IMG/VR virus record: IMGVR_UViG_3300050120_000230
Location: 351,410-415,409 of that record
Length of the DNA stretch: 64,000 nt
Reading direction: 5' to 3' (one strand)
Part shown: positions 7,072 to 51,544 of the stretch, in pieces
How positions within the stretch are numbered: the stretch's first letter is position 1
Layout of the letters: every line of letters begins with the position of its first letter
Translations under genes and position numbers: made by a program
The notes under the pieces: generated by a model
The model's input: the letters and a program-made list of their open reading frames with translations, nothing else
Database searches by the model: none
Told to the model about the DNA's origin: nothing

Positions 7072-7515
7072 ATGCGTTATTGGGAAATCATCTCTGAAGA
7101 AGGCTTGATTGTTCCGGGCATCAACACGACGCCTGATGTTCAACCCGGTGAGACCGCACGGCAGGCGGCCAAACTTGGCTTCACCGTAGATGCGAATGGC
7201 ATCCCGCCGCTCATTTATGGAGGAAGCTCCCACTCCACCGCCACGTCACCGAAAATGCGTAGGGACAAGGGCCAAATTTTCTATGGAAAGAATGGCGCCC
7301 CGGCGAACAAGAACGCACCAAGGGTGGTTCGTGAAGGTGCTGTTCTAGAAAACTTGGTGATTGTTTGTCCAACGTGCCATGTCGAACGACATGCCGGGCA
7401 CCGCCCAAATGTTGACTATTTGGGGCAACATGTTGATTTTTATGAAGAAATTGTGGAGCTTACCGGGATCGAACCGGTCGCCTCAACCTTGCAAAGGTCG
7501 CGCTCTACCAAATGA
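7072..7515 (+). CDS. Hypothetical protein ending in an HNH-like remnant; overlaps tRNA-Ala on the opposite strand
   Basis: TAAATA at 7061; C-terminal ENLVIVCPTCHVERH. Confidence 0.4.
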   Translation: MRYWEIISEEGLIVPGINTTPDVQPGETARQAAKLGFTVDANGIPPLIYGGSSHSTATSPKMRRDKGQIFYGKNGAPANKNAPRVVREGAVLENLVIVCPTCHVERHAGHRPNVDYLGQHVDFYEEIVELTGIEPVASTLQRSRSTK

Positions 7516-7526
7516 GCTAAAGCCCC
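7454..7526 (-). tRNA. tRNA-Ala(TGC)
   Basis: GGGGCTT/AAGCTCC acceptor with G3:U70, loop TTTGCAA, TTCGATC T-loop. Confidence 0.92.
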
Positions 7527-7562
7527 TAACGCTTTCGCGCGGTAATCTATTTATCAAACTGA

Positions 7563-7640
7563 TGGCGACGTGGGTAGGGCTCGAACCTACATACCTACCC
7601 CTTGCGGAGGTAGCCCCTAACCAATTCGGAACACCGCGTC
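7563..7640 (-). tRNA. Atypical tRNA, GCA (Cys) anticodon but C33 and G73
   Basis: Cloverleaf with GTAGG-TTCGAGC-CCTAC and encoded CCA; loop CCGCAAG. Confidence 0.6.
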
Positions 7641-21628: not shown

Positions 21629-21702
21629 GACGAGGTAGCTCAGGGGTTGAGCGTTTGGGCGTGAAGCTCGAAAGGTCGGTGGTTCGAATCCATCTCTCGT
21701 CA
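21629..21702 (+). tRNA. tRNA-like gene with 7-bp anticodon stem and GTGAA loop
   Basis: GACGAGG/TCTCGTC acceptor, GCTC/GAGC D-stem, GGTGG-TTCGAAT-CCATC T-arm. Confidence 0.65.
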
Positions 21703-21703
21703 C

Positions 21704-21810
21704 GGTCGAATAGCTCAGTGGTAGAGCAGCGCGATAATGGAGGGCTCCGATACGTAAGCGGTCCTGTGAAGTTATCGCGTGTGTCGGTGGTTCGAACCCA
21801 TCTTCGACTT
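21704..21810 (+). tRNA. tRNA-like gene with about 35 extra nt in the anticodon arm
   Basis: Canonical acceptor/D/T arms; 10-bp GCGCGATAAT/GTTATCGCGT stem enclosing 32 nt. Confidence 0.7.
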
Positions 21811-21820
21811 CTATTTTTCG

Positions 21821-21848
21821 TTGACGAAAAAATGTGATCCTCTATTAT
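21821..21848 (+). promoter_or_regulatory. Sigma70-like promoter
   Basis: TTGACG-N16-TATTAT ahead of tRNA genes. Confidence 0.55.
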
Positions 21849-21859
21849 GAGGTTGCGTT

Positions 21860-21972
21860 GATTCCGTAGCTCAGTTGGTAGAGCAGCGAACTCATCTAAT
21901 CCCTCCCATGAGGTTACGGGAGGTATTACTTAAATTCGCGGGTCCTCGGTTCGAGTCCGAGCGGAGTCACCA
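21860..21972 (+). tRNA. tRNA (possibly CAT anticodon) with 37-nt insert or intron in the anticodon loop
   Basis: GCGAA/TTCGC stem encloses 44 nt starting CTCAT and ending AA; encoded CCA. Confidence 0.7.
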
Positions 21973-21975
21973 AAT

Positions 21976-22063
21976 GCCCCCGTGGGCCGAGCGGTCGAAG
22001 GCCACGGTCTCTAAAACCGATGGAGAAATCCCAGCGCAGGTTCGAATCCTGTCGGGGGTGCCA
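21976..22063 (+). tRNA. Amber suppressor tRNA (CTA), type II, G73
   Basis: Loop CTCTAAA in CGGT/ACCG stem; long variable arm; GCAGG-TTCGAAT-CCTGT; CCA. Confidence 0.85.
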
Positions 22064-24864: not shown

Positions 24865-26205
24865 TTAGCCGTGCTCACCGGGCGGCGGCAGGGTCACCGG
24901 CGCGGCCACGGGGGCAGCGGCCGGGGGAGCCGGAGGGGCCGGGGGAGCGACGACCACGGTCGTTGCGACCACAGCCACCGGCTTGCAGGAACCACCGGCG
25001 CGACGCATCGCTTCGGCAACGTCCTTGTCTTCGGCGAGAAGCTCGCAGGCGACTTGCGTCATGCCCATCGAGTTCAGTTCGCGCGAATTCTTCAGACGGA
25101 CGCAGTTCCGGTCGGTCCAAGTGCTGGCCGCCGAGAAGCCGAAGGTGATGCCTTGGCCACCGACCGAGGACGAACCCATGCAGGTATCGACACCGGCCGT
25201 CAGCGGGGCGGCGTAGGCGGTGCCGACCGGGTTGCGCTTCTGCGCTTCGTTGCTGATGTTGACGCTCGTGCTGGTGTTCTGCGCGGCGTTGTTACCGGCG
25301 TTCGACTGGGTGTTGGTCGAGTTGCCGGAGTTCTTGGTGCCGCTGACAGCCGTCTGCGCTTGGCTGTTGTGGGCGTCCTGCGACTGGCCTTGGCTGGCGT
25401 TGCCGGAGTCGGCGATGCCTTGCTGTTGGCCTTGGCCTTGACCTTGGACATTCTTGTTGTCGTTGGCAGAGTTGCCCGACGCCAAAACCGACGACGACGT
25501 GTTGTCGGAGTTCAGCTTGGTGGTGTTGCCGTTGTTGCCGTTGTTACCGGCATTGACGGTGCCCGAGTTCGTGGTCGCGGTGCCGCCCTTGACGCTGGCG
25601 TCGGCGTGGTTGTCCACGTTGCCGGAGTTGTTGCCGCCGAGATTGGTGTTGTTGCCGCCGAGATTGGTGGTGGTGTTCGTGCCGGTCAGCGTGTTGCTGC
25701 CGTTGGTGTTGGTCTGGGTGCCGCCCTTGACGCTGGCATCACCACCAGTGGTGTTGCCGTTGTTGGAGCCGCCGGTCACGTTGCCCGAGCCATGGGAATC
25801 CACGTTGCCGGAGGCGATGGCCGAGCCGTTGGCGTTGGTGACCGCGCCGCCGACAGTGTTTCCGACAGTGCCGCCGGTCACATCAGCGTGGCCGCTGTTG
25901 GTGTTCAGATTGGCCGACGACGTGGCGGTGTTGGTGATCGGAGCCGCCGCCGTGATCGCGGTGTTGTTCGAGCCTTGGTTGGCTTGGATCGTCCCGGTCT
26001 GGGAGTTGCCGATGGCCGAGGCCGACGACAGACCAGACGAGTTGGTGATCGGAGCCGAAAGGGTCGGCGACTCATTGTTCGTCAGCGTGGAGCCGAGCGA
26101 GTTGGAGCCGGTGTTGGTTTGCGTGACACCGGGGTCGGTGGCGAACGCCGGGCTGGCGATCAGGGCGATGGCCGCTGACGCGATGAGGAGCTTTCTGAAA
26201 TTCAT
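24865..26205 (-). CDS. Secreted low-complexity N/G/S/T-rich protein with Cys-containing C-terminal domain
   Basis: Signal peptide ending AFA; repeated DASVKGGT and TNLGGNN; strong codon bias. Confidence 0.75.
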   Translation of the reverse strand: MNFRKLLIASAAIALIASPAFATDPGVTQTNTGSNSLGSTLTNNESPTLSAPITNSSGLSSASAIGNSQTGTIQANQGSNNTAITAAAPITNTATSSANLNTNSGHADVTGGTVGNTVGGAVTNANGSAIASGNVDSHGSGNVTGGSNNGNTTGGDASVKGGTQTNTNGSNTLTGTNTTTNLGGNNTNLGGNNSGNVDNHADASVKGGTATTNSGTVNAGNNGNNGNTTKLNSDNTSSSVLASGNSANDNKNVQGQGQGQQQGIADSGNASQGQSQDAHNSQAQTAVSGTKNSGNSTNTQSNAGNNAAQNTSTSVNISNEAQKRNPVGTAYAAPLTAGVDTCMGSSSVGGQGITFGFSAASTWTDRNCVRLKNSRELNSMGMTQVACELLAEDKDVAEAMRRAGGSCKPVAVVATTVVVAPPAPPAPPAAAPVAAPVTLPPPGEHG

Positions 26206-27317: not shown

Positions 27318-27936
27318 TCAAGGCGACAACGCCAGAAGCAGACGGTCGATGCCAATGGCCCAACCCACGCCTTCGGCGTATCGGCCGCCTCCGGCAATCT
27401 GCTTTTGTGCACCGAGCGCCGAACACTCAACCTCGAATCCATCCTCGACGTAGTAGGTCAAGCCACGCTTAACCGAATCGTTGAAGGTGTAATCTAGGCC
27501 GAGCTTGTCGAGACAGTTCCGCAAAAGCCCAGAGGCTTCATCGGCGCCATTCTCAACGTTCCCGAGAATTTCGATCCCAAACTGGGTGAACTCTCGATAG
27601 CGCCCGGCTTGCGGCCGTTCGTAGCGGTAGCAGCGGGAGACATAGAAAATGCGCTTGGAGGCACATTTCTTTGCCCACGACTCTCGCCAGATTTCCTGCA
27701 CCAGTCCAGTCACCTCGGGGATCAAGCAGACCGGGCGGCCTCCTTTGTCCTCGAAAGACCACATCTGATTCACGATCTCCGGCCCGGCCTTGTCAATGAA
27801 GGTCTGCTGACCCCACAAAGCCGGAAGAATTACTTCATCGAAGCCTGCTTCAATGAACCAACCCCCGGAGGATTTCGATGGTCTGGGTATAGGCTCTCGC
27901 CTCATCCCCTTCGATCAATCGTGTTCCACGCAACAT
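27318..27936 (-). CDS. hisS: Minimal histidyl-tRNA synthetase catalytic core; frameshift at G5 run 27866-27862
   Basis: MLRGTRL start after GGAG RBS; CLIPEVT, YRYERPQAGRYREFTQFGIE, RGLTYY, GGGRY, GWAIGIDRL. Confidence 0.75.
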
Positions 27937-27959
27937 TTTCTTCTCTCCAAAAAATTACC

Positions 27960-28068
27960 AAGCTGGGCAGGATTTGAACCTGCGGTTCCCACTCTCGAAC
28001 GGTTATGCGCGACCGATTTGAGCAAGAACTAGCGCATCAGAGCCCTTAGACCTCTCGGGCACCGGCTT
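27960..28068 (-). tRNA. tRNA-like gene with expanded anticodon arm
   Basis: AAGCCGG/CCAGCTT acceptor, CCC/GGG D-stem, GCAGG-TTCAAAT-CCTGC; central insert with TGCGC/GCGCA helix. Confidence 0.6.
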
Positions 28069-28073
28069 GGAAA

Positions 28074-28241
28074 TTATGCATTGCGAAGTTGTGCCTTCAG
28101 TTCAGCAATCTCTTGCATGATCTTCGGGACGCTGACTTCGCGTGATGTTGAATCCTTCTTACCCAATGAGGTACGAAGGAACTGCTCAAGATCGATGATC
28201 CGGTCATGTAGCTTGAGCTTCTTCTTGTCGATGCGGCTCAT
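28074..28241 (-). CDS. 55-aa basic helical protein (not in ORF track)
   Basis: MSRIDKKKLKLHDRII...AQLRNA; ATGA-coupled to upstream ORF. Confidence 0.55.
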   Translation of the reverse strand: MSRIDKKKLKLHDRIIDLEQFLRTSLGKKDSTSREVSVPKIMQEIAELKAQLRNA

Positions 28242-28459
28242 ACGTCGGTCGCCTTCCTGTGATTGCGATAGTCGCGCTCACGCTCGGCCACGATCTTGGA
28301 ATCGACCGTCCCACGAAAAACCTTCATCACTCGCCATCCACGACCTTCGTCGTCGAAATCGAGAATCCTGCCTTCGACCGCGAACTTGGAAGGAAGCCAC
28401 GACGTGAACTCGTCTCCGTTCGCTCGCTTTAGTTTGCATTGCGTATGAGTAGCCATCAT
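28238..28459 (-). CDS. Hypothetical protein inside tRNA operon
   Basis: AAGGAGG RBS. Confidence 0.65.
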   Translation of the reverse strand: MMATHTQCKLKRANGDEFTSWLPSKFAVEGRILDFDDEGRGWRVMKVFRGTVDSKIVAERERDYRNHRKATDV

Positions 28460-28497
28460 GACTGCCTCCTTTGTTATGGCCCGCAGGCCGGTTGAAT

Positions 28498-28571
28498 TGG
28501 TACTGACTGTAAGAATCGAACTTACATAAGCGGTTCCACAAACCGCCGCTCTACCATTGAGCTAAGCCAGC
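28498..28571 (-). tRNA. tRNA-His(GTG), alphaproteobacterial type (no G-1, A73)
   Basis: T-GCTGGCT...GCGGT TTGTGGA ACCGC...AGTCAGT-A-CCA. Confidence 0.9.
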
Positions 28572-28579
28572 ATAGACAG

Positions 28580-28661
28580 TGGAGAGGGCTAGGACTCGAA
28601 CCTAGCATAGCTCTATTGGCAACGGCTGGCTGGCCGCCGGGCTCCGCGCCCCATCCTATCC
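28580..28661 (-). tRNA. Degenerate tRNA-like element, anticodon not assignable
   Basis: CTAGG-TTCGAGT-CCTAG T-arm, GGATAGG/CCTCTCC acceptor, 6-nt anticodon loop. Confidence 0.45.
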
Positions 28662-28677
28662 GTAAAGTGCGGTTGCT

Positions 28678-28761
28678 TGGTGGGCCGGGTTGGATTCGAA
28701 CCAACGCGTCTTTCGAAACCGGGTTACAGCCGGTCGCCTTCAACCACTCAGCCACCGTCCC
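28678..28761 (-). tRNA. tRNA-Tyr(GTA)
   Basis: ACCGG CTGTAAC CCGGT; A73-CCA. Confidence 0.92.
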
Positions 28762-28785
28762 ACTAAGGAACCGCACTTTAGTATT

Positions 28786-28862
28786 TGGAGTTCACGGTGA
28801 GACTCGCACTCACTTTAACGAGGGTTGCAATCTCGTGCCTCGGCTTCTTCGGCCTCGTGAAC
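28786..28862 (-). tRNA. tRNA-Cys(GCA)
   Basis: Loop TTGCAAC; U73-CCA; variant T-loop TGCGAGT. Confidence 0.85.
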
Positions 28863-28865
28863 ATA

Positions 28866-28950
28866 TGGTGGGTAGGTGCCGGATCGAACGACTCCCCGCT
28901 AGAGAAGGGATTTACAATCCCCGTGTCAGAACCACTGACTTTACCTACCC
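28866..28950 (-). tRNA. tRNA-Tyr(GTA), second divergent copy
   Basis: GGGA TTGTAAA TCCC; GGGTAGG/CCTACCC-A-CCA. Confidence 0.85.
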
Positions 28951-28954
28951 GTAT

Positions 28955-29040
28955 TGGCGGAAAATGGAGGCATCGAACCTCTGACCTTTCGGTCACTACG
29001 AGTTAGCAACTCGCTCGGGGAGCCAACCCCAGCATTTTCC
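28955..29040 (-). tRNA. tRNA-Ser(GCT)
   Basis: CGAG TTGCTAA CTCG; long variable arm; G73-CCA. Confidence 0.88.
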
Positions 29041-29041
29041 G

Positions 29042-29127
29042 TGGCGGACGGTGGAAGCATCGAACTTCTGACCTTGCGGTCACTACACGCTTCCAACGTG
29101 TTCGGGGAGCCAACCCCAGCACCGTCC
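29042..29127 (-). tRNA. tRNA-Ser(GGA)
   Basis: CACG TTGGAAG CGTG; long variable arm; G73-CCA. Confidence 0.88.
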
Positions 29128-29135
29128 GTTTGTAT

Positions 29136-29223
29136 TGGAGGAAGGTGGAGGCATCGAACCTCTGACCCTTGCAGGTCACTACTGTTTTCGAAACAGTTTG
29201 GGGAGCCGACCCCAGCACCTTCC
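29136..29223 (-). tRNA. tRNA-Ser(CGA)
   Basis: CTGT TTCGAAA ACAG; long variable arm; U73-CCA. Confidence 0.85.
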
Positions 29224-29236
29224 ATAGGAGAATTAA

Positions 29237-29321
29237 TGGCGGTAGGTGAAGGAATCGAACCCTCAACCTTTCGGTTGGGACGGTGTTCAAAACCGCTTGA
29301 CCACCTTGGCCCCCACCTACC
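29237..29321 (-). tRNA. tRNA-Ser(TGA)
   Basis: GCGGT TTTGAAC ACCGT; long variable arm; G73-CCA. Confidence 0.88.
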
Positions 29322-29376
29322 CTCATTAATTCTCCTAGCCTACTTTTTCGTCATCCTTTCCGGCCGCATGGCCAAT

Positions 29377-29405
29377 AAAAAACCCGGTCCTTTGAAGGAA
29401 CCGGG
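29377..29405 (-). terminator. Attenuator terminator 2
   Basis: CCCGGTTCCTTCAAAGGACCGGG-TTTTTT on the minus strand. Confidence 0.85.
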
Positions 29406-29411
29406 AGCATT

Positions 29412-29439
29412 AAAAAACCCGGCGTCCTTGGGAGCCGGG
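29412..29439 (-). terminator. Attenuator terminator 1
   Basis: CCCGGCTCCCAAGGACGCCGGG-TTTTTT on the minus strand. Confidence 0.85.
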
Positions 29440-29467
29440 TGAGAAGTTTTTGAGACCTTTGGGAACC

Positions 29468-29563
29468 TTAGATTTTGGTTCCAGCATCGCTCATACGCTT
29501 CGCACCCTTGCTCGAAGAGCAATGGCTGGAATAGCAATACGAGTATGAACTGATAGCGATCAT
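29468..29563 (-). CDS. Ser/Tyr/Cys/His-rich leader peptide of the tRNA operon (31 aa; not in ORF track)
   Basis: AGGAGG-N7-ATG; MIAISSYSYCYSSHCSSSKGAKRMSDAGTKI*. Confidence 0.85.
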   Translation of the reverse strand: MIAISSYSYCYSSHCSSSKGAKRMSDAGTKI

Positions 29564-29632
29564 GATACTGCCTCCTGCTCGGGTTGACGTTGCGTTAAAA
29601 AGTTGAACGGCCCAAAGCCGCTCTGGAATTTG

Positions 29633-29663
29633 TATTTATGCACGGACTTCAAACGCCGGTCAA
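29633..29663 (-). promoter_or_regulatory. Promoter of leader/tRNA operon
   Basis: TTGACC-N17-CATAAATA on the minus strand. Confidence 0.6.
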
Positions 29664-29691
29664 CATGTTTCGTTGCACGAAAGAAAATTAA

Positions 29692-29925
29692 TCAGAGCCA
29701 GAACATTTTGAAGAGGGCGGCGTCCTCAGAGAACGAGAATTGCAGTTCACATCGGGTCATTTGTTTTTTGATACGAACTGGGTTACCCAACTTATCTAGC
29801 CACTCTTGAACATCCGACGACGGCGTGACCACAAACCACATACTTCGTGGGTTTTCCTCATCTCGGCATCTTGTGAGGAGATGCGGGAACTCCAACTGTC
29901 TCACAAGAATAGTTCGTCTAGACAT
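29692..29925 (-). CDS. Small motif-family protein
   Basis: FSEDAALFKMFWL. Confidence 0.6.
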   Translation of the reverse strand: MSRRTILVRQLEFPHLLTRCRDEENPRSMWFVVTPSSDVQEWLDKLGNPVRIKKQMTRCELQFSFSEDAALFKMFWL

Positions 29926-30137: not shown

Positions 30138-30464
30138 TCAGAGCCAGAACAATTTGAACAGCGCGGCATCTTCTACCTTCTCGAACGAGAGGCGGCAGTT
30201 GGACATTCCCGGTCGGACAGTCACCAGACCCTTCATATTTTGAGAACACCATTGCTCAACATCGTGATTGAGCTTGGAAAGAATAAAGACATTTTGATCG
30301 TGCGGATCATCTTGCTCATACGTTTCGAGCAAACGTTCATGCTCGCGGCCGAACAGGCTGATGAGACGATCAGCGGGCGTCATGAGAACCGCTAAATCCC
30401 CGTAGGCAAACCCTTGCGAAATCACTTTCGTTACACTGCCCATTGTTGTTCCAAGCGCATACAC
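30138..30464 (-). CDS. Small motif-family protein
   Basis: FEKVEDAALFKLFWL. Confidence 0.6.
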   Translation of the reverse strand: MYALGTTMGSVTKVISQGFAYGDLAVLMTPADRLISLFGREHERLLETYEQDDPHDQNVFILSKLNHDVEQWCSQNMKGLVTVRPGMSNCRLSFEKVEDAALFKLFWL

Positions 30465-50690: not shown

Positions 50691-51476
50691 ATGAACCGCA
50701 TTCGCTCCATCCTTTTCACCGCCGTCTACTACGTCGTCAGCATTCTCTACGTGCTGTTGGCGGCACTGTTTCTCGCCCTTCCCGGCCGCAAGGCTGTCGG
50801 ATGGATCGTCCGCCGCTACGCTCGCCGCATGGTGCAAGCGATGTGGCTGTTCGCGGGGATCAAGCTGAAGGTGGTCGGGCGTGAGAAAGTCCCGGCGGCC
50901 TGCATCATCGCCGCCAAGCATCATAGCTGGTTCGACGGATTCTCCTGCTACAGCCAGTTTGACGACATGGCGTTCGTCACCGGCGACCATCTGGAAAAAG
51001 TGCCTCTGTTGAGCGGTGTGCTGCACAAGCTCGGAGCCATCGTCGTGGATAGCTGCGGTGGCCACAAGGCCCGCGCGTCCCTGCAACAGAACGCTGCCAA
51101 GGCGAACGAAGAAGGGCGACGCATTCTGATCTACCCCGAGGGGCACCTTGCGAAGGCCGGTGAGCGGTTCCGCTACAAGACCGGCGTCTACCACATGTAT
51201 AAGAACTTCGGCCTCCCTGTGGTGCCCGCCGCGACGAATCTGGGTGTGTTCGCGCCGCAGCAAGGCTTGGACAAGTTCCCCGGCACCGCGACTCTTCAGT
51301 TCCTCGATCCAATTCCGCCCGGCCTGTCGAAGGCCGACTTCATGAAGCGTCTGGAAGACGCCATCGAAGGCCAGAGCGATATCCTGATCGCCGAAGCTTG
51401 CCGCCAGCCCGTCGTTCCGTCGAAGCTGGTTCCCGATCCCCTGACGTTCGCCCAAGCGATGACTCAGTTGTCCTGA
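50691..51476 (+). CDS. plsC: 1-acyl-sn-glycerol-3-phosphate acyltransferase-like
   Basis: KHHSWFD (HX4D), IYPEG, PVVP. Confidence 0.8.
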   Translation: MNRIRSILFTAVYYVVSILYVLLAALFLALPGRKAVGWIVRRYARRMVQAMWLFAGIKLKVVGREKVPAACIIAAKHHSWFDGFSCYSQFDDMAFVTGDHLEKVPLLSGVLHKLGAIVVDSCGGHKARASLQQNAAKANEEGRRILIYPEGHLAKAGERFRYKTGVYHMYKNFGLPVVPAATNLGVFAPQQGLDKFPGTATLQFLDPIPPGLSKADFMKRLEDAIEGQSDILIAEACRQPVVPSKLVPDPLTFAQAMTQLS

Positions 51477-51544
51477 TTATCGTTGACAGTTTTGGGCGTC
51501 ACCCGTAATCTCGTAAACGAGAAATATTTTTTGGAGGCACAACC

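What the first reader, a model, noticed from the sequence alone, without database searches (positions are those of the whole stretch)
29377..29530. Mutually exclusive RNA structures of the attenuator, with a double terminator
Seen in sequence: leader segment GAGCAAGGGTGCGAAG (29513-29498) can form about 13 bp with CTTCTCACCCGGCTC (29446-29432), which includes the 5' arm of terminator 1. That is an antiterminator. The same GAGCAA can instead be held in hairpin TTGCTC-TTC-GAGCAA formed with sensor codons. Sensor-region GTTCATAC and TTCCAGC pair with downstream GTATGAGC and GCTGGAA. GGAACC (29482-29477) can pair with GGTTCC just after the stop or in the 5' arm of terminator 2. Inference: classic 1:2 / 2:3 / 3:4 logic with two terminators for tight repression.
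Basis: partly seen in the sequence, partly recalled or inferred. Interest (0 to 1): 0.8.

Follow-up and report, generated by a model that had tools for sequence, protein, structure and literature searches.

The report
Attenuator switch controlling phage tRNA genes
A 31-codon leader gene whose codons list exactly the tRNAs encoded just downstream is followed by RNA hairpins that can either stop or allow transcription, so this giant phage probably makes its own tRNAs only when ribosomes run short of them; I found no earlier description of classic attenuation used this way.

Summary
On the minus strand, a sigma70-like promoter, a 31-codon leader ORF (29563-29468), two intrinsic terminators (T1 29440-29412, T2 29405-29377) and a nine-tRNA operon follow one another. 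Codons 5-18 are all Ser/Tyr/Cys/His. They use all six Ser codons and match the seven anticodon species downstream.

Supported:
It is isoenergetic with T1 once a ribosome masks the sensor, and it sits at the same ORF position in homologues.
- In an 11-member sister family that includes Caulobacter phage phiCbK, the 1:2, 2:3 and 3:4 helices all carry compensatory changes.
- The TTGCTC/GAGCAA hairpin and the hairpin around the stop codon.

Not supported:
- The two long-range sensor pairings (P<=0.09).
- GGAACC pairing with T2 (P=0.00, not conserved).

Instead, T1's freed 3' arm can pair with T2's 5' arm (9 bp, as stable as T2), which couples the two terminators. Leader-terminator units whose codons list the downstream tRNAs recur in many other phage tRNA operons. 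Ten literature searches found no description. This is classic attenuation with a new cargo.

The parts
29634..29663 (-). Sigma70-like promoter: -35 TTGACC (29663-29658), TG (29642-29641), -10 ATAAAT (29639-29634)
   Evidence: Read from the sequence. The same layout is conserved in L029. A TTGAC(N)-N16-18-TAnnnT element precedes every other unit. The strict promoter scan did not call it.
29605..29623 (-). 5' stem-loop between the start of transcription and the SD, followed by UUUUU
   Evidence: 8 bp. A stem-loop at this position is present in all units. Its role was not tested.
29571..29576 (-). Shine-Dalgarno AGGAGG, 7 nt before the ATG
29468..29563 (-). Leader ORF, 31 codons plus TAA
   Evidence: Homologues are L029 2080-2175, L004 4108-4200 and L005 3834-3926.
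29510..29551 (-). Sensor: codons 5-18, all Ser/Tyr/Cys/His, using all six Ser codons, both Tyr codons, UGC and CAU
   Evidence: The 14-of-14 run is unique among about 86,000 stop-free 14-codon windows in six frames.
29508..29522 (-). Hairpin 1:2 (TTGCTC-TTC-GAGCAA), made of the last sensor codons and the start of segment 2
   Evidence: P=0.94. Hairpins with compensatory sequence are present in L004 and L005.
29498..29513 (-). Segment 2: 5' strand of the antiterminator (ORF nt 51-66)
29462..29482 (-). Hairpin with the stop codon in its loop, at the apex of the antiterminator domain
   Evidence: P=0.99. L029 has a compensatory change. The stop codon sits in a hairpin loop in all four homologues.
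29432..29446 (-). Segment 3: 3' strand of the antiterminator, which includes the 5' arm of T1
29412..29440 (-). Terminator 1: stem 29440-29417, U-run 29417-29412. Its 3' arm (29427-29418) is segment 4.
   Evidence: -14.3 kcal/mol.
29377..29405 (-). Terminator 2: stem 29405-29383, U-run 29382-29377. Its 5' arm (29405-29397) is segment 5 and can pair with segment 4.
28498..29321 (-). Regulated tRNA operon: Ser(UGA), Ser(CGA), Ser(GGA), Ser(GCU), Tyr(GUA), Cys(GCA), Tyr(GUA), one odd 83-nt tRNA-like gene, His(GUG)
   Evidence: ARAGORN. Relaxed ARAGORN gives Tyr at 28950-28866. Rfam tRNA scores 39 bits at 28862-28789, with a GCA anticodon read from the sequence.

Best explanation
The element is a ribosome-mediated (leader-peptide) transcription attenuator that gates a phage tRNA operon.

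Layout. Host-type RNA polymerase starts at a sigma70-like promoter and transcribes a 31-codon leader. Codons 5-18 of the leader need exactly the tRNA species encoded downstream: four Ser isoacceptors, Tyr, Cys and His.

OFF state. If those tRNAs are plentiful, the ribosome runs through segment 2 (29513-29498) to the stop codon, which lies at the apex of the antiterminator domain. Segment 3 stays free. T1 forms and most transcripts end there. Polymerases that escape T1 meet T2, whose 5' arm is free.

ON state. If any of the sensed tRNAs is scarce, the ribosome stalls in the sensor. Segment 2 then pairs with segment 3 as soon as segment 3 is made, and T1 cannot form. T1's orphaned 3' arm pairs with the near-identical 5' arm of T2, so T2 is weakened too. 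Transcription continues into the tRNA genes and restores the supply, which closes a negative feedback loop.

Shown here: the sequence anatomy, the codon-to-anticodon match, the energetics, conservation of the architecture, and covariation in a sister family.

Inferred: that the leader is translated, the kinetic order of folding, the 4:5 relay, and the physiological signal.
For: Codon match:
- 14 of 14 sensor codons are read by the downstream tRNAs, and 7 of 7 anticodon species are represented in the leader.
- Chance expectation is 4e-14 per window, and the run is unique in the window.

Co-variation of leader and operon:
- L005 has no Tyr codon in its sensor and no Tyr tRNA called downstream.
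- In seven independent units, the true leader-to-operon assignment is the best of 5040 permutations on three measures.

Antiterminator energetics:
- AT duplex z is -3.1.
- With a ribosome stalled mid-sensor, the AT and T1 states differ by +1.2, -0.8, -0.5 and -0.1 kcal/mol in WIN, L029, L004 and L005. The AT domain has z between -2.7 and -3.7.
- Masked folding gives P(T1) of 0.26 with the A site at codon 13 against 0.86-1.00 from codon 15 onward, apart from a dip to 0.81 at codon 28. In L004 it is 0.00-0.34 at codons 5-16 against mostly 0.6-0.9 afterwards.

Conservation of the architecture:
- In ten units, 4 to 11 bases of the terminator's 5' arm (at least 70% of the arm in eight units, 4 of 10 in L012) pair with bases inside the leader ORF beyond the first eleven codons. 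In WIN and L029 this fold swaps the outer GAGC:GCUC pairs for sensor codons 12-13. Domain z ranges from -2.0 to -5.6.
- In four 31-codon leaders the 5' strand occupies the same ORF nucleotides (about 48-70) with different sequence.

Covariation in 11 phiCbK-type homologues:
- AT has 6 pairs and 12 cells changed on both sides (0 of 500 shuffles reach the cell count or the covariation score; 31 of 500 reach the pair count). Partners slid by 1-3 columns pair in only 31-51% of cells.
- The 1:2 hairpin plus T have 6 pairs and 14 cells changed on both sides (0 of 500 shuffles).
- The helices share columns, so they are mutually exclusive.

Terminator 2:
- The 4:5 helix has 9 bp at -13.4, -15.3 and -14.2 kcal/mol, against T2 at -13.1, -14.7 and -14.2.
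- P(T2 | T1 formed) is 0.84, 0.99 and 0.96. P(T2 | AT formed) is 0.54, 0.36 and 0.13.
- Refolding barriers are 6-12 kcal/mol.
Against: - There are no expression data. Everything is sequence analysis and nearest-neighbour energetics.
- In the window itself, equilibrium folding favours the AT only for stalls at codons 12-14. Stalls at codons 7-10 give P(T1) of about 0.99, so early sensor codons work only if folding is kinetically controlled.
- A ribosome parked at the stop codon does not cover segment 2 (P(AT) 0.16-0.47).
- The 1:2 hairpin overlaps only 4-6 nt of the AT, and an AT variant coexists with it.
- The 4:5 pairing is no stronger than pairing with some unrelated GC-rich terminator arms. 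It may be a by-product of T2 being a copy of T1. In the window, T2 still has P 0.54-0.80 in the AT state.
- The window clade has only four distinct sequences, so covariation is demonstrated in the sister family and not in the window's own clade.
- A weak promoter between T2 and the first tRNA cannot be excluded, although none was called.
Confidence: 0.75

Rival explanations
1. The same attenuator, but terminator 2 is not regulated. It is a constant partial terminator, a duplicated copy of T1, that only lowers overall output. All regulation happens at T1.
For: In the window, T2 keeps P 0.79-0.97 under every ribosome mask. The 4:5 pairing is no more specific than pairing with some unrelated GC-rich terminator arms. 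L005 and all other families manage with one terminator.
Against: A constant second terminator does not improve the on/off ratio. The 4:5 helix is as stable as T2 in all three genomes and forms first. Forcing the AT lowers P(T2) in all three genomes. The T1 and T2 arms stay alike within each genome while differing between genomes.
Confidence: 0.3
2. One reading: terminator 2 is relieved because GGAACC (29482-29477), freed when the sensor is masked, pairs with GGTTCC in T2's 5' arm.
For: Six perfect complementary bases exist.
Against: Pair probability is 0.00 in every state. GGAACC is held at P=0.99 by the GGTTCC just after the stop. L029 changed both sides of that local hairpin in a compensatory way, while the T2 pairing drops to 2 of 6 in L029 and in L004.
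Confidence: 0.03
3. An ordinary small protein gene followed by a tandem terminator that ends an upstream transcription unit. The tRNAs have their own promoter, and the codon match is coincidence or reflects a Ser/Tyr/Cys-rich peptide with its own function, such as a modified-peptide precursor.
For: The ORF has a good SD. Cys/Ser/Tyr-rich short peptides do exist as natural-product precursors. No expression data are available.
Against: The match holds at codon and anticodon level and recurs with entirely different amino-acid sets in unrelated operons (permutation test 1 of 5040). The post-sensor ORF segment pairs with the terminator arm in all units, with covariation. No promoter was called in the 55 nt between T2 and the first tRNA. 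No modification enzymes lie nearby.
Confidence: 0.04
4. A translation-independent RNA switch in which tRNAs bind the codon array directly, in the manner of a T-box, to choose between terminator and antiterminator.
For: The regulated logic concerns tRNAs, and T-box elements also end in terminator/antiterminator pairs.
Against: Rfam finds no T-box or any other family match here or in ten related loci. The codons lie in one reading frame behind an SD and a start codon and end at a stop codon placed at the hairpin apex. ORF length is conserved at 27-32 codons.
Confidence: 0.03

Closest known systems
trp operon attenuator (trpL) of enteric bacteria
   Same: A short leader ORF carries regulatory codons. 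Segment 2 can pair with segment 1 or 3, and segment 3 with 2 or 4 (the terminator). Ribosome position decides the outcome.
   Different: The trp leader senses one amino acid with two codons. Its ribosome at the stop codon covers segment 2. It has a single terminator, and its cargo is biosynthetic enzymes. Here the stop codon lies about 30 nt past segment 2, at the apex of the antiterminator domain, and the cargo is tRNA genes.
his operon attenuator (hisL)
   Same: A run of sensor codons and a chain of alternating hairpins (A:B, C:D, E:F against B:C, D:E). This is the same relay principle as 1:2, 3:4, 5:6 against 2:3, 4:5 proposed here. The comparison rests on my knowledge of the family.
   Different: The his leader has seven codons of one amino acid, and only its last hairpin is a terminator. 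Here both 3:4 and 5:6 are terminators, and the sensor lists seven anticodon species.
thr and ilv leaders (multivalent attenuation)
   Same: The leader mixes codons for several amino acids, so shortage of any one of them relieves termination.
   Different: They carry two or three amino acids linked by one pathway. Here the codon set equals the arbitrary tRNA content of the operon, and it changes when that content changes.
pheST attenuator (pheM leader) of E. coli
   Same: Leader-peptide attenuation applied to a component of the translation apparatus.
   Different: It regulates a synthetase, not tRNAs, and senses a single amino acid.
T-box riboswitches
   Same: They sense the state of specific tRNAs and choose between terminator and antiterminator.
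   Different: They bind tRNA directly, without translation, and have a conserved T-box sequence that Rfam does not find here.

Membership tests
Leader-peptide (ribosome-mediated) transcription attenuators | A short translatable ORF with SD directly upstream of the regulated genes, on the same strand | tested here: met
   AGGAGG lies 7 nt before the ATG, and the ORF has 31 codons. In homologues and analogues the ORF has 27-32 codons.
Leader-peptide (ribosome-mediated) transcription attenuators | A cluster of regulatory codons cognate to the regulated product | tested here: met
   14 of 14 codons are read by the downstream tRNAs, and all 7 anticodon species are covered. The run is unique in the window. 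Permutation test 1 of 5040.
Leader-peptide (ribosome-mediated) transcription attenuators | An intrinsic terminator between the leader and the regulated genes | tested here: met
   T1 is -14.3 kcal/mol and T2 is -13.1, each with six U.
Leader-peptide (ribosome-mediated) transcription attenuators | An antiterminator that excludes the terminator, placed so that a ribosome stalled on the sensor leaves it free while a ribosome translating on disrupts it | tested here: met
   In the window the equilibrium effect is confined to stalls at codons 12-14.
Leader-peptide (ribosome-mediated) transcription attenuators | A 1:2 hairpin that sequesters segment 2 (anti-antiterminator or pause hairpin) | tested here: inconclusive
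   The hairpin is conserved (P 0.94; compensatory in L004 and L005; covariation in A5). It overlaps only the outer 4-6 nt of the AT, and an AT variant coexists with it. Pausing cannot be tested here.
Leader-peptide (ribosome-mediated) transcription attenuators | Termination responds to the supply of the cognate charged tRNA | not testable with these tools
   This needs reporter assays, in vitro transcription-translation, or Term-seq.
Curated Rfam leader families (Trp, His, Thr, Leu, Phe leaders and others) | A match to the family covariance model at its gathering score | tested here: not met
   No leader family matched in the window at gathering score, in 27900-29700 at E<=1, or in ten related loci.
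T-box riboswitch | Specifier loop plus conserved T-box antiterminator, recognised by the Rfam model | tested here: not met
Multi-hairpin relay attenuators (his type) | A chain of at least five segments in which each inner segment can pair with either neighbour | tested here: inconclusive
   The 4:5 helix has 9 bp and is as stable as 5:6 in WIN, L029 and L004. The conditional probability of T2 drops when the AT is forced. Specificity over unrelated terminator arms is modest, and only three sequences are available.

The most novel reading that the evidence does not exclude
Phages of Alphaproteobacteria regulate their tRNA operons with a modular family of leader-peptide attenuators. The family reaches from 400-600 kb jumbo phages to the laboratory phage phiCbK. 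In each unit the sensor cassette is rewritten to list, codon by codon, the tRNAs of that operon. Phage tRNA synthesis would then be demand-driven: it switches on when decoding of any listed codon slows. Possible causes of slow decoding are a codon-usage mismatch, host shut-off, or host defences that cut or deplete tRNAs. The tandem terminators of the window clade would add a relay (2:3 then 4:5) that tightens the off state without cost to the on state.
Probability: 0.6. Interest if true: 0.9.

Novelty: new variant of a known kind. Interest (0 to 1): 0.85.

Why it matters
- Why phages carry tRNA genes, and how they use them, has been debated for decades. The proposals include codon-usage compensation, survival of host shut-off, and counter-defence against anticodon nucleases. 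A sensor that turns tRNA operons on when particular codons are read slowly makes these ideas directly testable, because the leader states which tRNAs the phage monitors.
- The finding would explain why phage tRNA genes are grouped into operons with arbitrary amino-acid sets.
- It would add tRNA genes to the cargo of leader-peptide attenuation.
- It provides natural, compact, multi-input codon-level sensors.
- The same element is present, unannotated or labelled only 'terminator', in phiCbK and about 48 other cultured phages of Caulobacter and Brevundimonas. Analogous units occur in cultured Erythrobacter and Sphingobium phages. Experiments are therefore within easy reach.

Tried and rejected
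- Four pattern or profile scans of viral contigs returned only the window's own contig, apart from L004 in the first: leader DNA, leader profile, 3' ORF module, and T1-T2 motif.
- The degenerate leader pattern in metagenomes gave 26 hits. Of these, 24 were chance matches without a leader-like ORF or tRNAs, and 2 were the same true homologue, L029=L047.
- BLAST of the window leader against GenBank phages found nothing significant.
- Equilibrium masked folding cannot discriminate in units with very strong terminators, where P(T) is about 1 everywhere. For these units I used truncated transcripts and state energies instead.
- The simple arm-versus-leader duplex test is significant in only about half of the units.
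- MAFFT columns misplace the terminator arms between distant homologues. Column-based pair counts for L004, L005 and for WIN against Bajun were therefore discarded in favour of per-sequence folds.
- Roseobacter phage DSS3P8 showed no convincing leader, so the element is not universal.
- The tRNA clusters at window 7453-7640 and 21629-22063 have no such leader.
- Cross-genome duplex controls showed that the 4:5 pairing is not sequence-specific enough to prove selection.

Full report
WHERE AND WHAT. The window is part of IMG/VR contig UViG_3300050120_000230, a 415 kb jumbo-phage contig. It is related to Sinorhizobium phage Phosso. The finding lies on the minus strand. Reading 5' to 3' on that strand:
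- a sigma70-like promoter (TTGACC 29663-29658, TG, ATAAAT 29639-29634);
- a 5' stem-loop (29623-29605);
- AGGAGG, then a 31-codon ORF (29563-29468);
- terminator T1 (stem 29440-29417, six U);
- terminator T2 (stem 29405-29383, six U);
- 55 nt later, a row of tRNA genes down to 28498.

THE CODON LIST. Codons 5-18 of the ORF are S S Y S Y C Y S S H C S S S. They use AGU, UCA, UCG, UCC, AGC, UCU (all six Ser codons), UAC and UAU, UGC, and CAU.
- The genes that follow are tRNA-Ser(UGA), Ser(CGA), Ser(GGA), Ser(GCU), Tyr(GUA), Cys(GCA), Tyr(GUA), one aberrant tRNA-like gene, and His(GUG).
- These calls come from ARAGORN, relaxed ARAGORN for the first Tyr, and Rfam tRNA at 39 bits for Cys.
- All 14 sensor codons are read by these tRNAs, and all seven anticodon species have a codon in the leader.
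- S/Y/C/H codons make up 11.0% of long ORFs in the window, so 14 in a row is expected at 4e-14. It is the only such run in about 86,000 stop-free 14-codon windows in six frames.

OBSERVATION CHECK.
- The antiterminator (AT), 29513-29498 with 29446-29432, has 13 bp and includes T1's 5' arm. Its duplex energy (-17.4 kcal/mol) beats 99.4% of dinucleotide shuffles.
- TTGCTC-TTC-GAGCAA has pair probability 0.94 in free RNA.
- The GGAACC/GGTTCC hairpin around the stop codon has probability 0.99.
- The two long-range sensor pairings reach only 0.09 and 0.00.
- GGAACC with T2's arm has probability 0.00.

I masked 28 nt around each A-site codon.
- In the window, P(T1) is 0.87 without a ribosome. It is 0.86-1.00 with the A site from codon 15 to the stop, apart from a dip to 0.81 at codon 28.
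- P(T1) falls to 0.55, 0.26 and 0.82 at codons 12, 13 and 14, where P(AT) is 0.46, 0.77 and 0.20.
- Stalls at codons 7-10 leave T1 at 0.99. T2 stays at 0.80-0.98 throughout.
- In homologue L004 the switch is clean: P(T1) is 0.00-0.34 at codons 5-16 and mostly 0.6-0.9 later. In L029 it is weak: 0.62-0.81 against 0.95-0.97.
- With a ribosome stalled mid-sensor, the AT and T1 states are isoenergetic in all four homologues (difference +1.2, -0.8, -0.5, -0.1 kcal/mol). The AT domain is far more stable than shuffles (z -2.7 to -3.7).
- Direct refolding barriers from AT to T1 are 7-12 kcal/mol. A pre-formed AT should therefore survive the short decision time. That last step is inference.

HOMOLOGUES.
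- L029=L047 (soil metagenomes), L004 and L005=L006 (jumbo-phage contigs) carry leaders of 30-31 codons at the same place.
- L029 and L004 have sensors made of S/H/Y/C, two terminators, and Ser x3, Cys, Tyr x2 and His downstream.
- L005's sensor has Ser and His with one Cys and no Tyr. It has one terminator and is followed by Ser x4 and His x2, with no Tyr tRNA called.
- Between WIN and L029, T1 has one C-G to U-A change and the stop hairpin one A-U to G-C change.
- The 1:2 hairpin is UUGCUC/GAGCAA in WIN and L029, GCUAUC/GGUAGC in L004, and UUCGAC/GUCGAA in L005.
- GGAACC with T2 keeps only 2 of 6 pairs in L029 and in L004.

THE SAME DESIGN ELSEWHERE. A scan for short ORF, terminator and tRNAs, followed by targeted look-ups, found units with quite different sensors. 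Each matches its own operon.
- Erythrobacter phages vB_EliS-L02 and XM05 have three consecutive units. Their sensors list N/V/I/A/M/P, then F/G/R/K/D/E, then T/Q/L/H/C/W/Y/S. The operons that follow carry Pro, Val, Ile, Ala, Asn; then Lys, Gly, Asp, Glu, Arg, Phe; then Ser, Tyr, Leu, Thr, His, Gln, Cys, Trp.
- L012 has the sensor L Y P M P C Y P, followed by Tyr, Pro(UGG), Leu(GAG), Pro(CGG), Met and Cys.
- L011 and L009 each have a unit. Sphingobium phage Lacusarx has two.
- Brevundimonas phage Bajun has the sensor Y R Q N V Q N I R V V R F N R, followed by Tyr, Val, Ile, Val, Gln, Asn, Arg, Arg.
- The true leader-to-operon assignment is the best of all 5040 permutations for three scores.
- BLAST of the Bajun unit hits 49 phage records, including phiCbK (JX100813.1, about 51341-51500). 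There it is unannotated or labelled 'terminator'.
- The C-terminus of phiCbK gp083 plus a terminator before Pro, Lys, Leu and Ser tRNAs looks like a second unit.
- Geometry is uniform: 27-32 codons, and 146-163 nt from the start codon to the end of the terminator.
- The 3' end of the ORF is recognisably homologous between L029/WIN and Bajun/Rogue, although the sensors differ. The scaffold therefore looks modular.

STRUCTURE ACROSS THE FAMILY.
- In ten units, the RNA left free by a ribosome stalled early in the sensor (A site about codon 8) folds into one long hairpin. In it, 4 to 11 bases of the terminator's 5' arm (at least 70% of the arm in eight units, 4 of 10 in L012) pair with bases inside the leader ORF beyond the first eleven codons. 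The stop codon is close to the apical region (z -2.0 to -5.6).
- In WIN, L029, Bajun and XM05a the 5' strand occupies ORF nucleotides about 48-70. At 8 of the 13 WIN pairs, the pair differs on both sides from the Bajun pair at the same ORF position.
- On the alignment of 11 phiCbK-type homologues (A5), the 17-bp AT has 84% of cells paired, with 6 pairs and 12 cells changed on both sides. No shuffle of 500 reaches the percentage paired, the cell count or the covariation score; 31 of 500 reach the pair count. Partners slid by 1-3 columns pair in only 31-51% of cells.
- The 1:2 hairpin plus the terminator have 96% of cells paired, with 6 pairs and 14 cells changed on both sides. No shuffle of 500 reaches these.
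- Columns 54-59 belong to both 1:2 and AT. Columns 133-142 belong to both AT and T. This is direct evidence for selected, mutually exclusive helices, though in the sister family and not in the window's own four-member clade.

TERMINATOR 2.
- T2's 5' arm (CCCGGUUCC) is almost a copy of T1's (CCCGGCUCC). T1's 3' arm can therefore pair with it: 9 bp at -13.4, -15.3 and -14.2 kcal/mol in WIN, L029 and L004, against -13.1, -14.7 and -14.2 for T2 itself.
- P(T2) is 0.84, 0.99 and 0.96 when T1 is enforced, and 0.54, 0.36 and 0.13 when T1's 5' arm is held by the AT.
- The barrier from 4:5 to T2 is 6-10 kcal/mol.
- This gives a relay. The off state is 1:2, 3:4, 5:6. The on state is 2:3, 4:5. T2 then catches polymerases that leak through T1 only in the off state.
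- Caveat: unrelated GC-rich terminator arms pair with T2's arm almost as well in some cases. The relay may be a by-product of duplication, and in the window it is the weakest of the three. I rate it at about 0.45.

MECHANISM. The element is a demand sensor for the operon's own tRNAs and acts as an OR gate over the listed codons. Using all six Ser codons, each matched by an isoacceptor gene, argues for sensing at tRNA level and not at amino-acid level. That reading is inference. The 1:2 hairpin may act as a pause or anti-antiterminator element as in trp, but this was not tested.

COMPARISON AND NOVELTY.
- The element works like the trp, his, thr and pheM leaders. It meets the structural criteria of leader-peptide attenuation.
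- It matches no Rfam leader or T-box model, and its cargo is tRNA genes.
Two of them served only to locate the genome papers.
- The genome papers of vB_EliS-L02 and phiCbK do not mention leaders or attenuation. The phiCbK paper states that Rfam found no RNA elements other than tRNAs.
- Subscription literature could not be searched.
- Verdict: a new variant of a known kind.

LIMITS. There are no expression data. The energy model has errors of 1-2 kcal/mol, the same order as the AT/T1 differences. Kinetic folding was not simulated. The window clade is small.

Noticed in passing
window 21629-22063 (+): A second tRNA cluster holds a tRNA with a CUA anticodon (amber-suppressor type, called 'Pyl' by ARAGORN). 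It also holds two Rfam tRNA matches of 107 and 110 nt that must carry inserts. L004 has two CUA tRNAs as well. This hints at stop-codon reassignment or suppression in these jumbo phages.
   Followed up: no
window 27318-27905 (-): A 195-aa protein consisting only of the histidyl-tRNA synthetase class II catalytic core (Pfam tRNA-synt_His, 1.5e-17). It lies between two tRNA-His genes at the distal end of the same operon. It is conserved in about 20 jumbo-phage contigs and in Sinorhizobium phage Phosso.
   Followed up: partly
window 29605-29623 (-) and the equivalent place in every other unit: A stem-loop lies between the promoter and the Shine-Dalgarno sequence in every leader unit examined. In the window it is followed by UUUUU. 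Its function is unknown; it may be a 5' stabiliser or a pause element.
   Followed up: partly
window 28579-28661 (-) and 27958-28069 (-): Two tRNA-like genes with abnormal features. One is 83 nt long with a non-standard anticodon loop. The other appears to carry a 36-nt insert and was called Ser(CGA) only at relaxed threshold.
   Followed up: no
window 29692-29925 (-) and 30138-30464 (-): Two paralogous small ORFs (77 and 108 aa) just upstream of the leader share the C-terminal motif EDAALFK(M/L)FWL. Neither has a Pfam match.
   Followed up: no
window 24865-26205 (-): A 446-aa protein that is very rich in Ser, Thr, Asn and Gly, with a hydrophobic N-terminus and a Pro/Ala-rich C-terminus. The local GC rises to 62%.
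   Followed up: no
L002 6954-7362 (Erythrobacter phage vB_EliS-L02): A phage-encoded two-piece alpha-proteobacterial tmRNA (Rfam alpha_tmRNA, 84 bits) lies directly after the three leader-controlled tRNA operons.
   Followed up: no
L060 1-240 (phiCbK JX100813.1 49551-49790): The annotated protein gp083 ends in a Ser/Leu/Lys/Pro/Thr/Ala-rich stretch. It is followed by a terminator and then tRNAs Pro, Pro, Lys, Lys, Leu x3 and Ser x2. It is probably a second leader peptide annotated as a hypothetical protein.
   Followed up: partly
leaders in L029, L005, L002, L012, L057, XM05: Many leaders begin Met-Phe (MFV, MFN, MFT). Several end in D-x-G-T-x-(I/F) before the stop. The C-terminal module is conserved at the nucleotide level between distant phages, while the sensor cassette differs.
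   Followed up: partly
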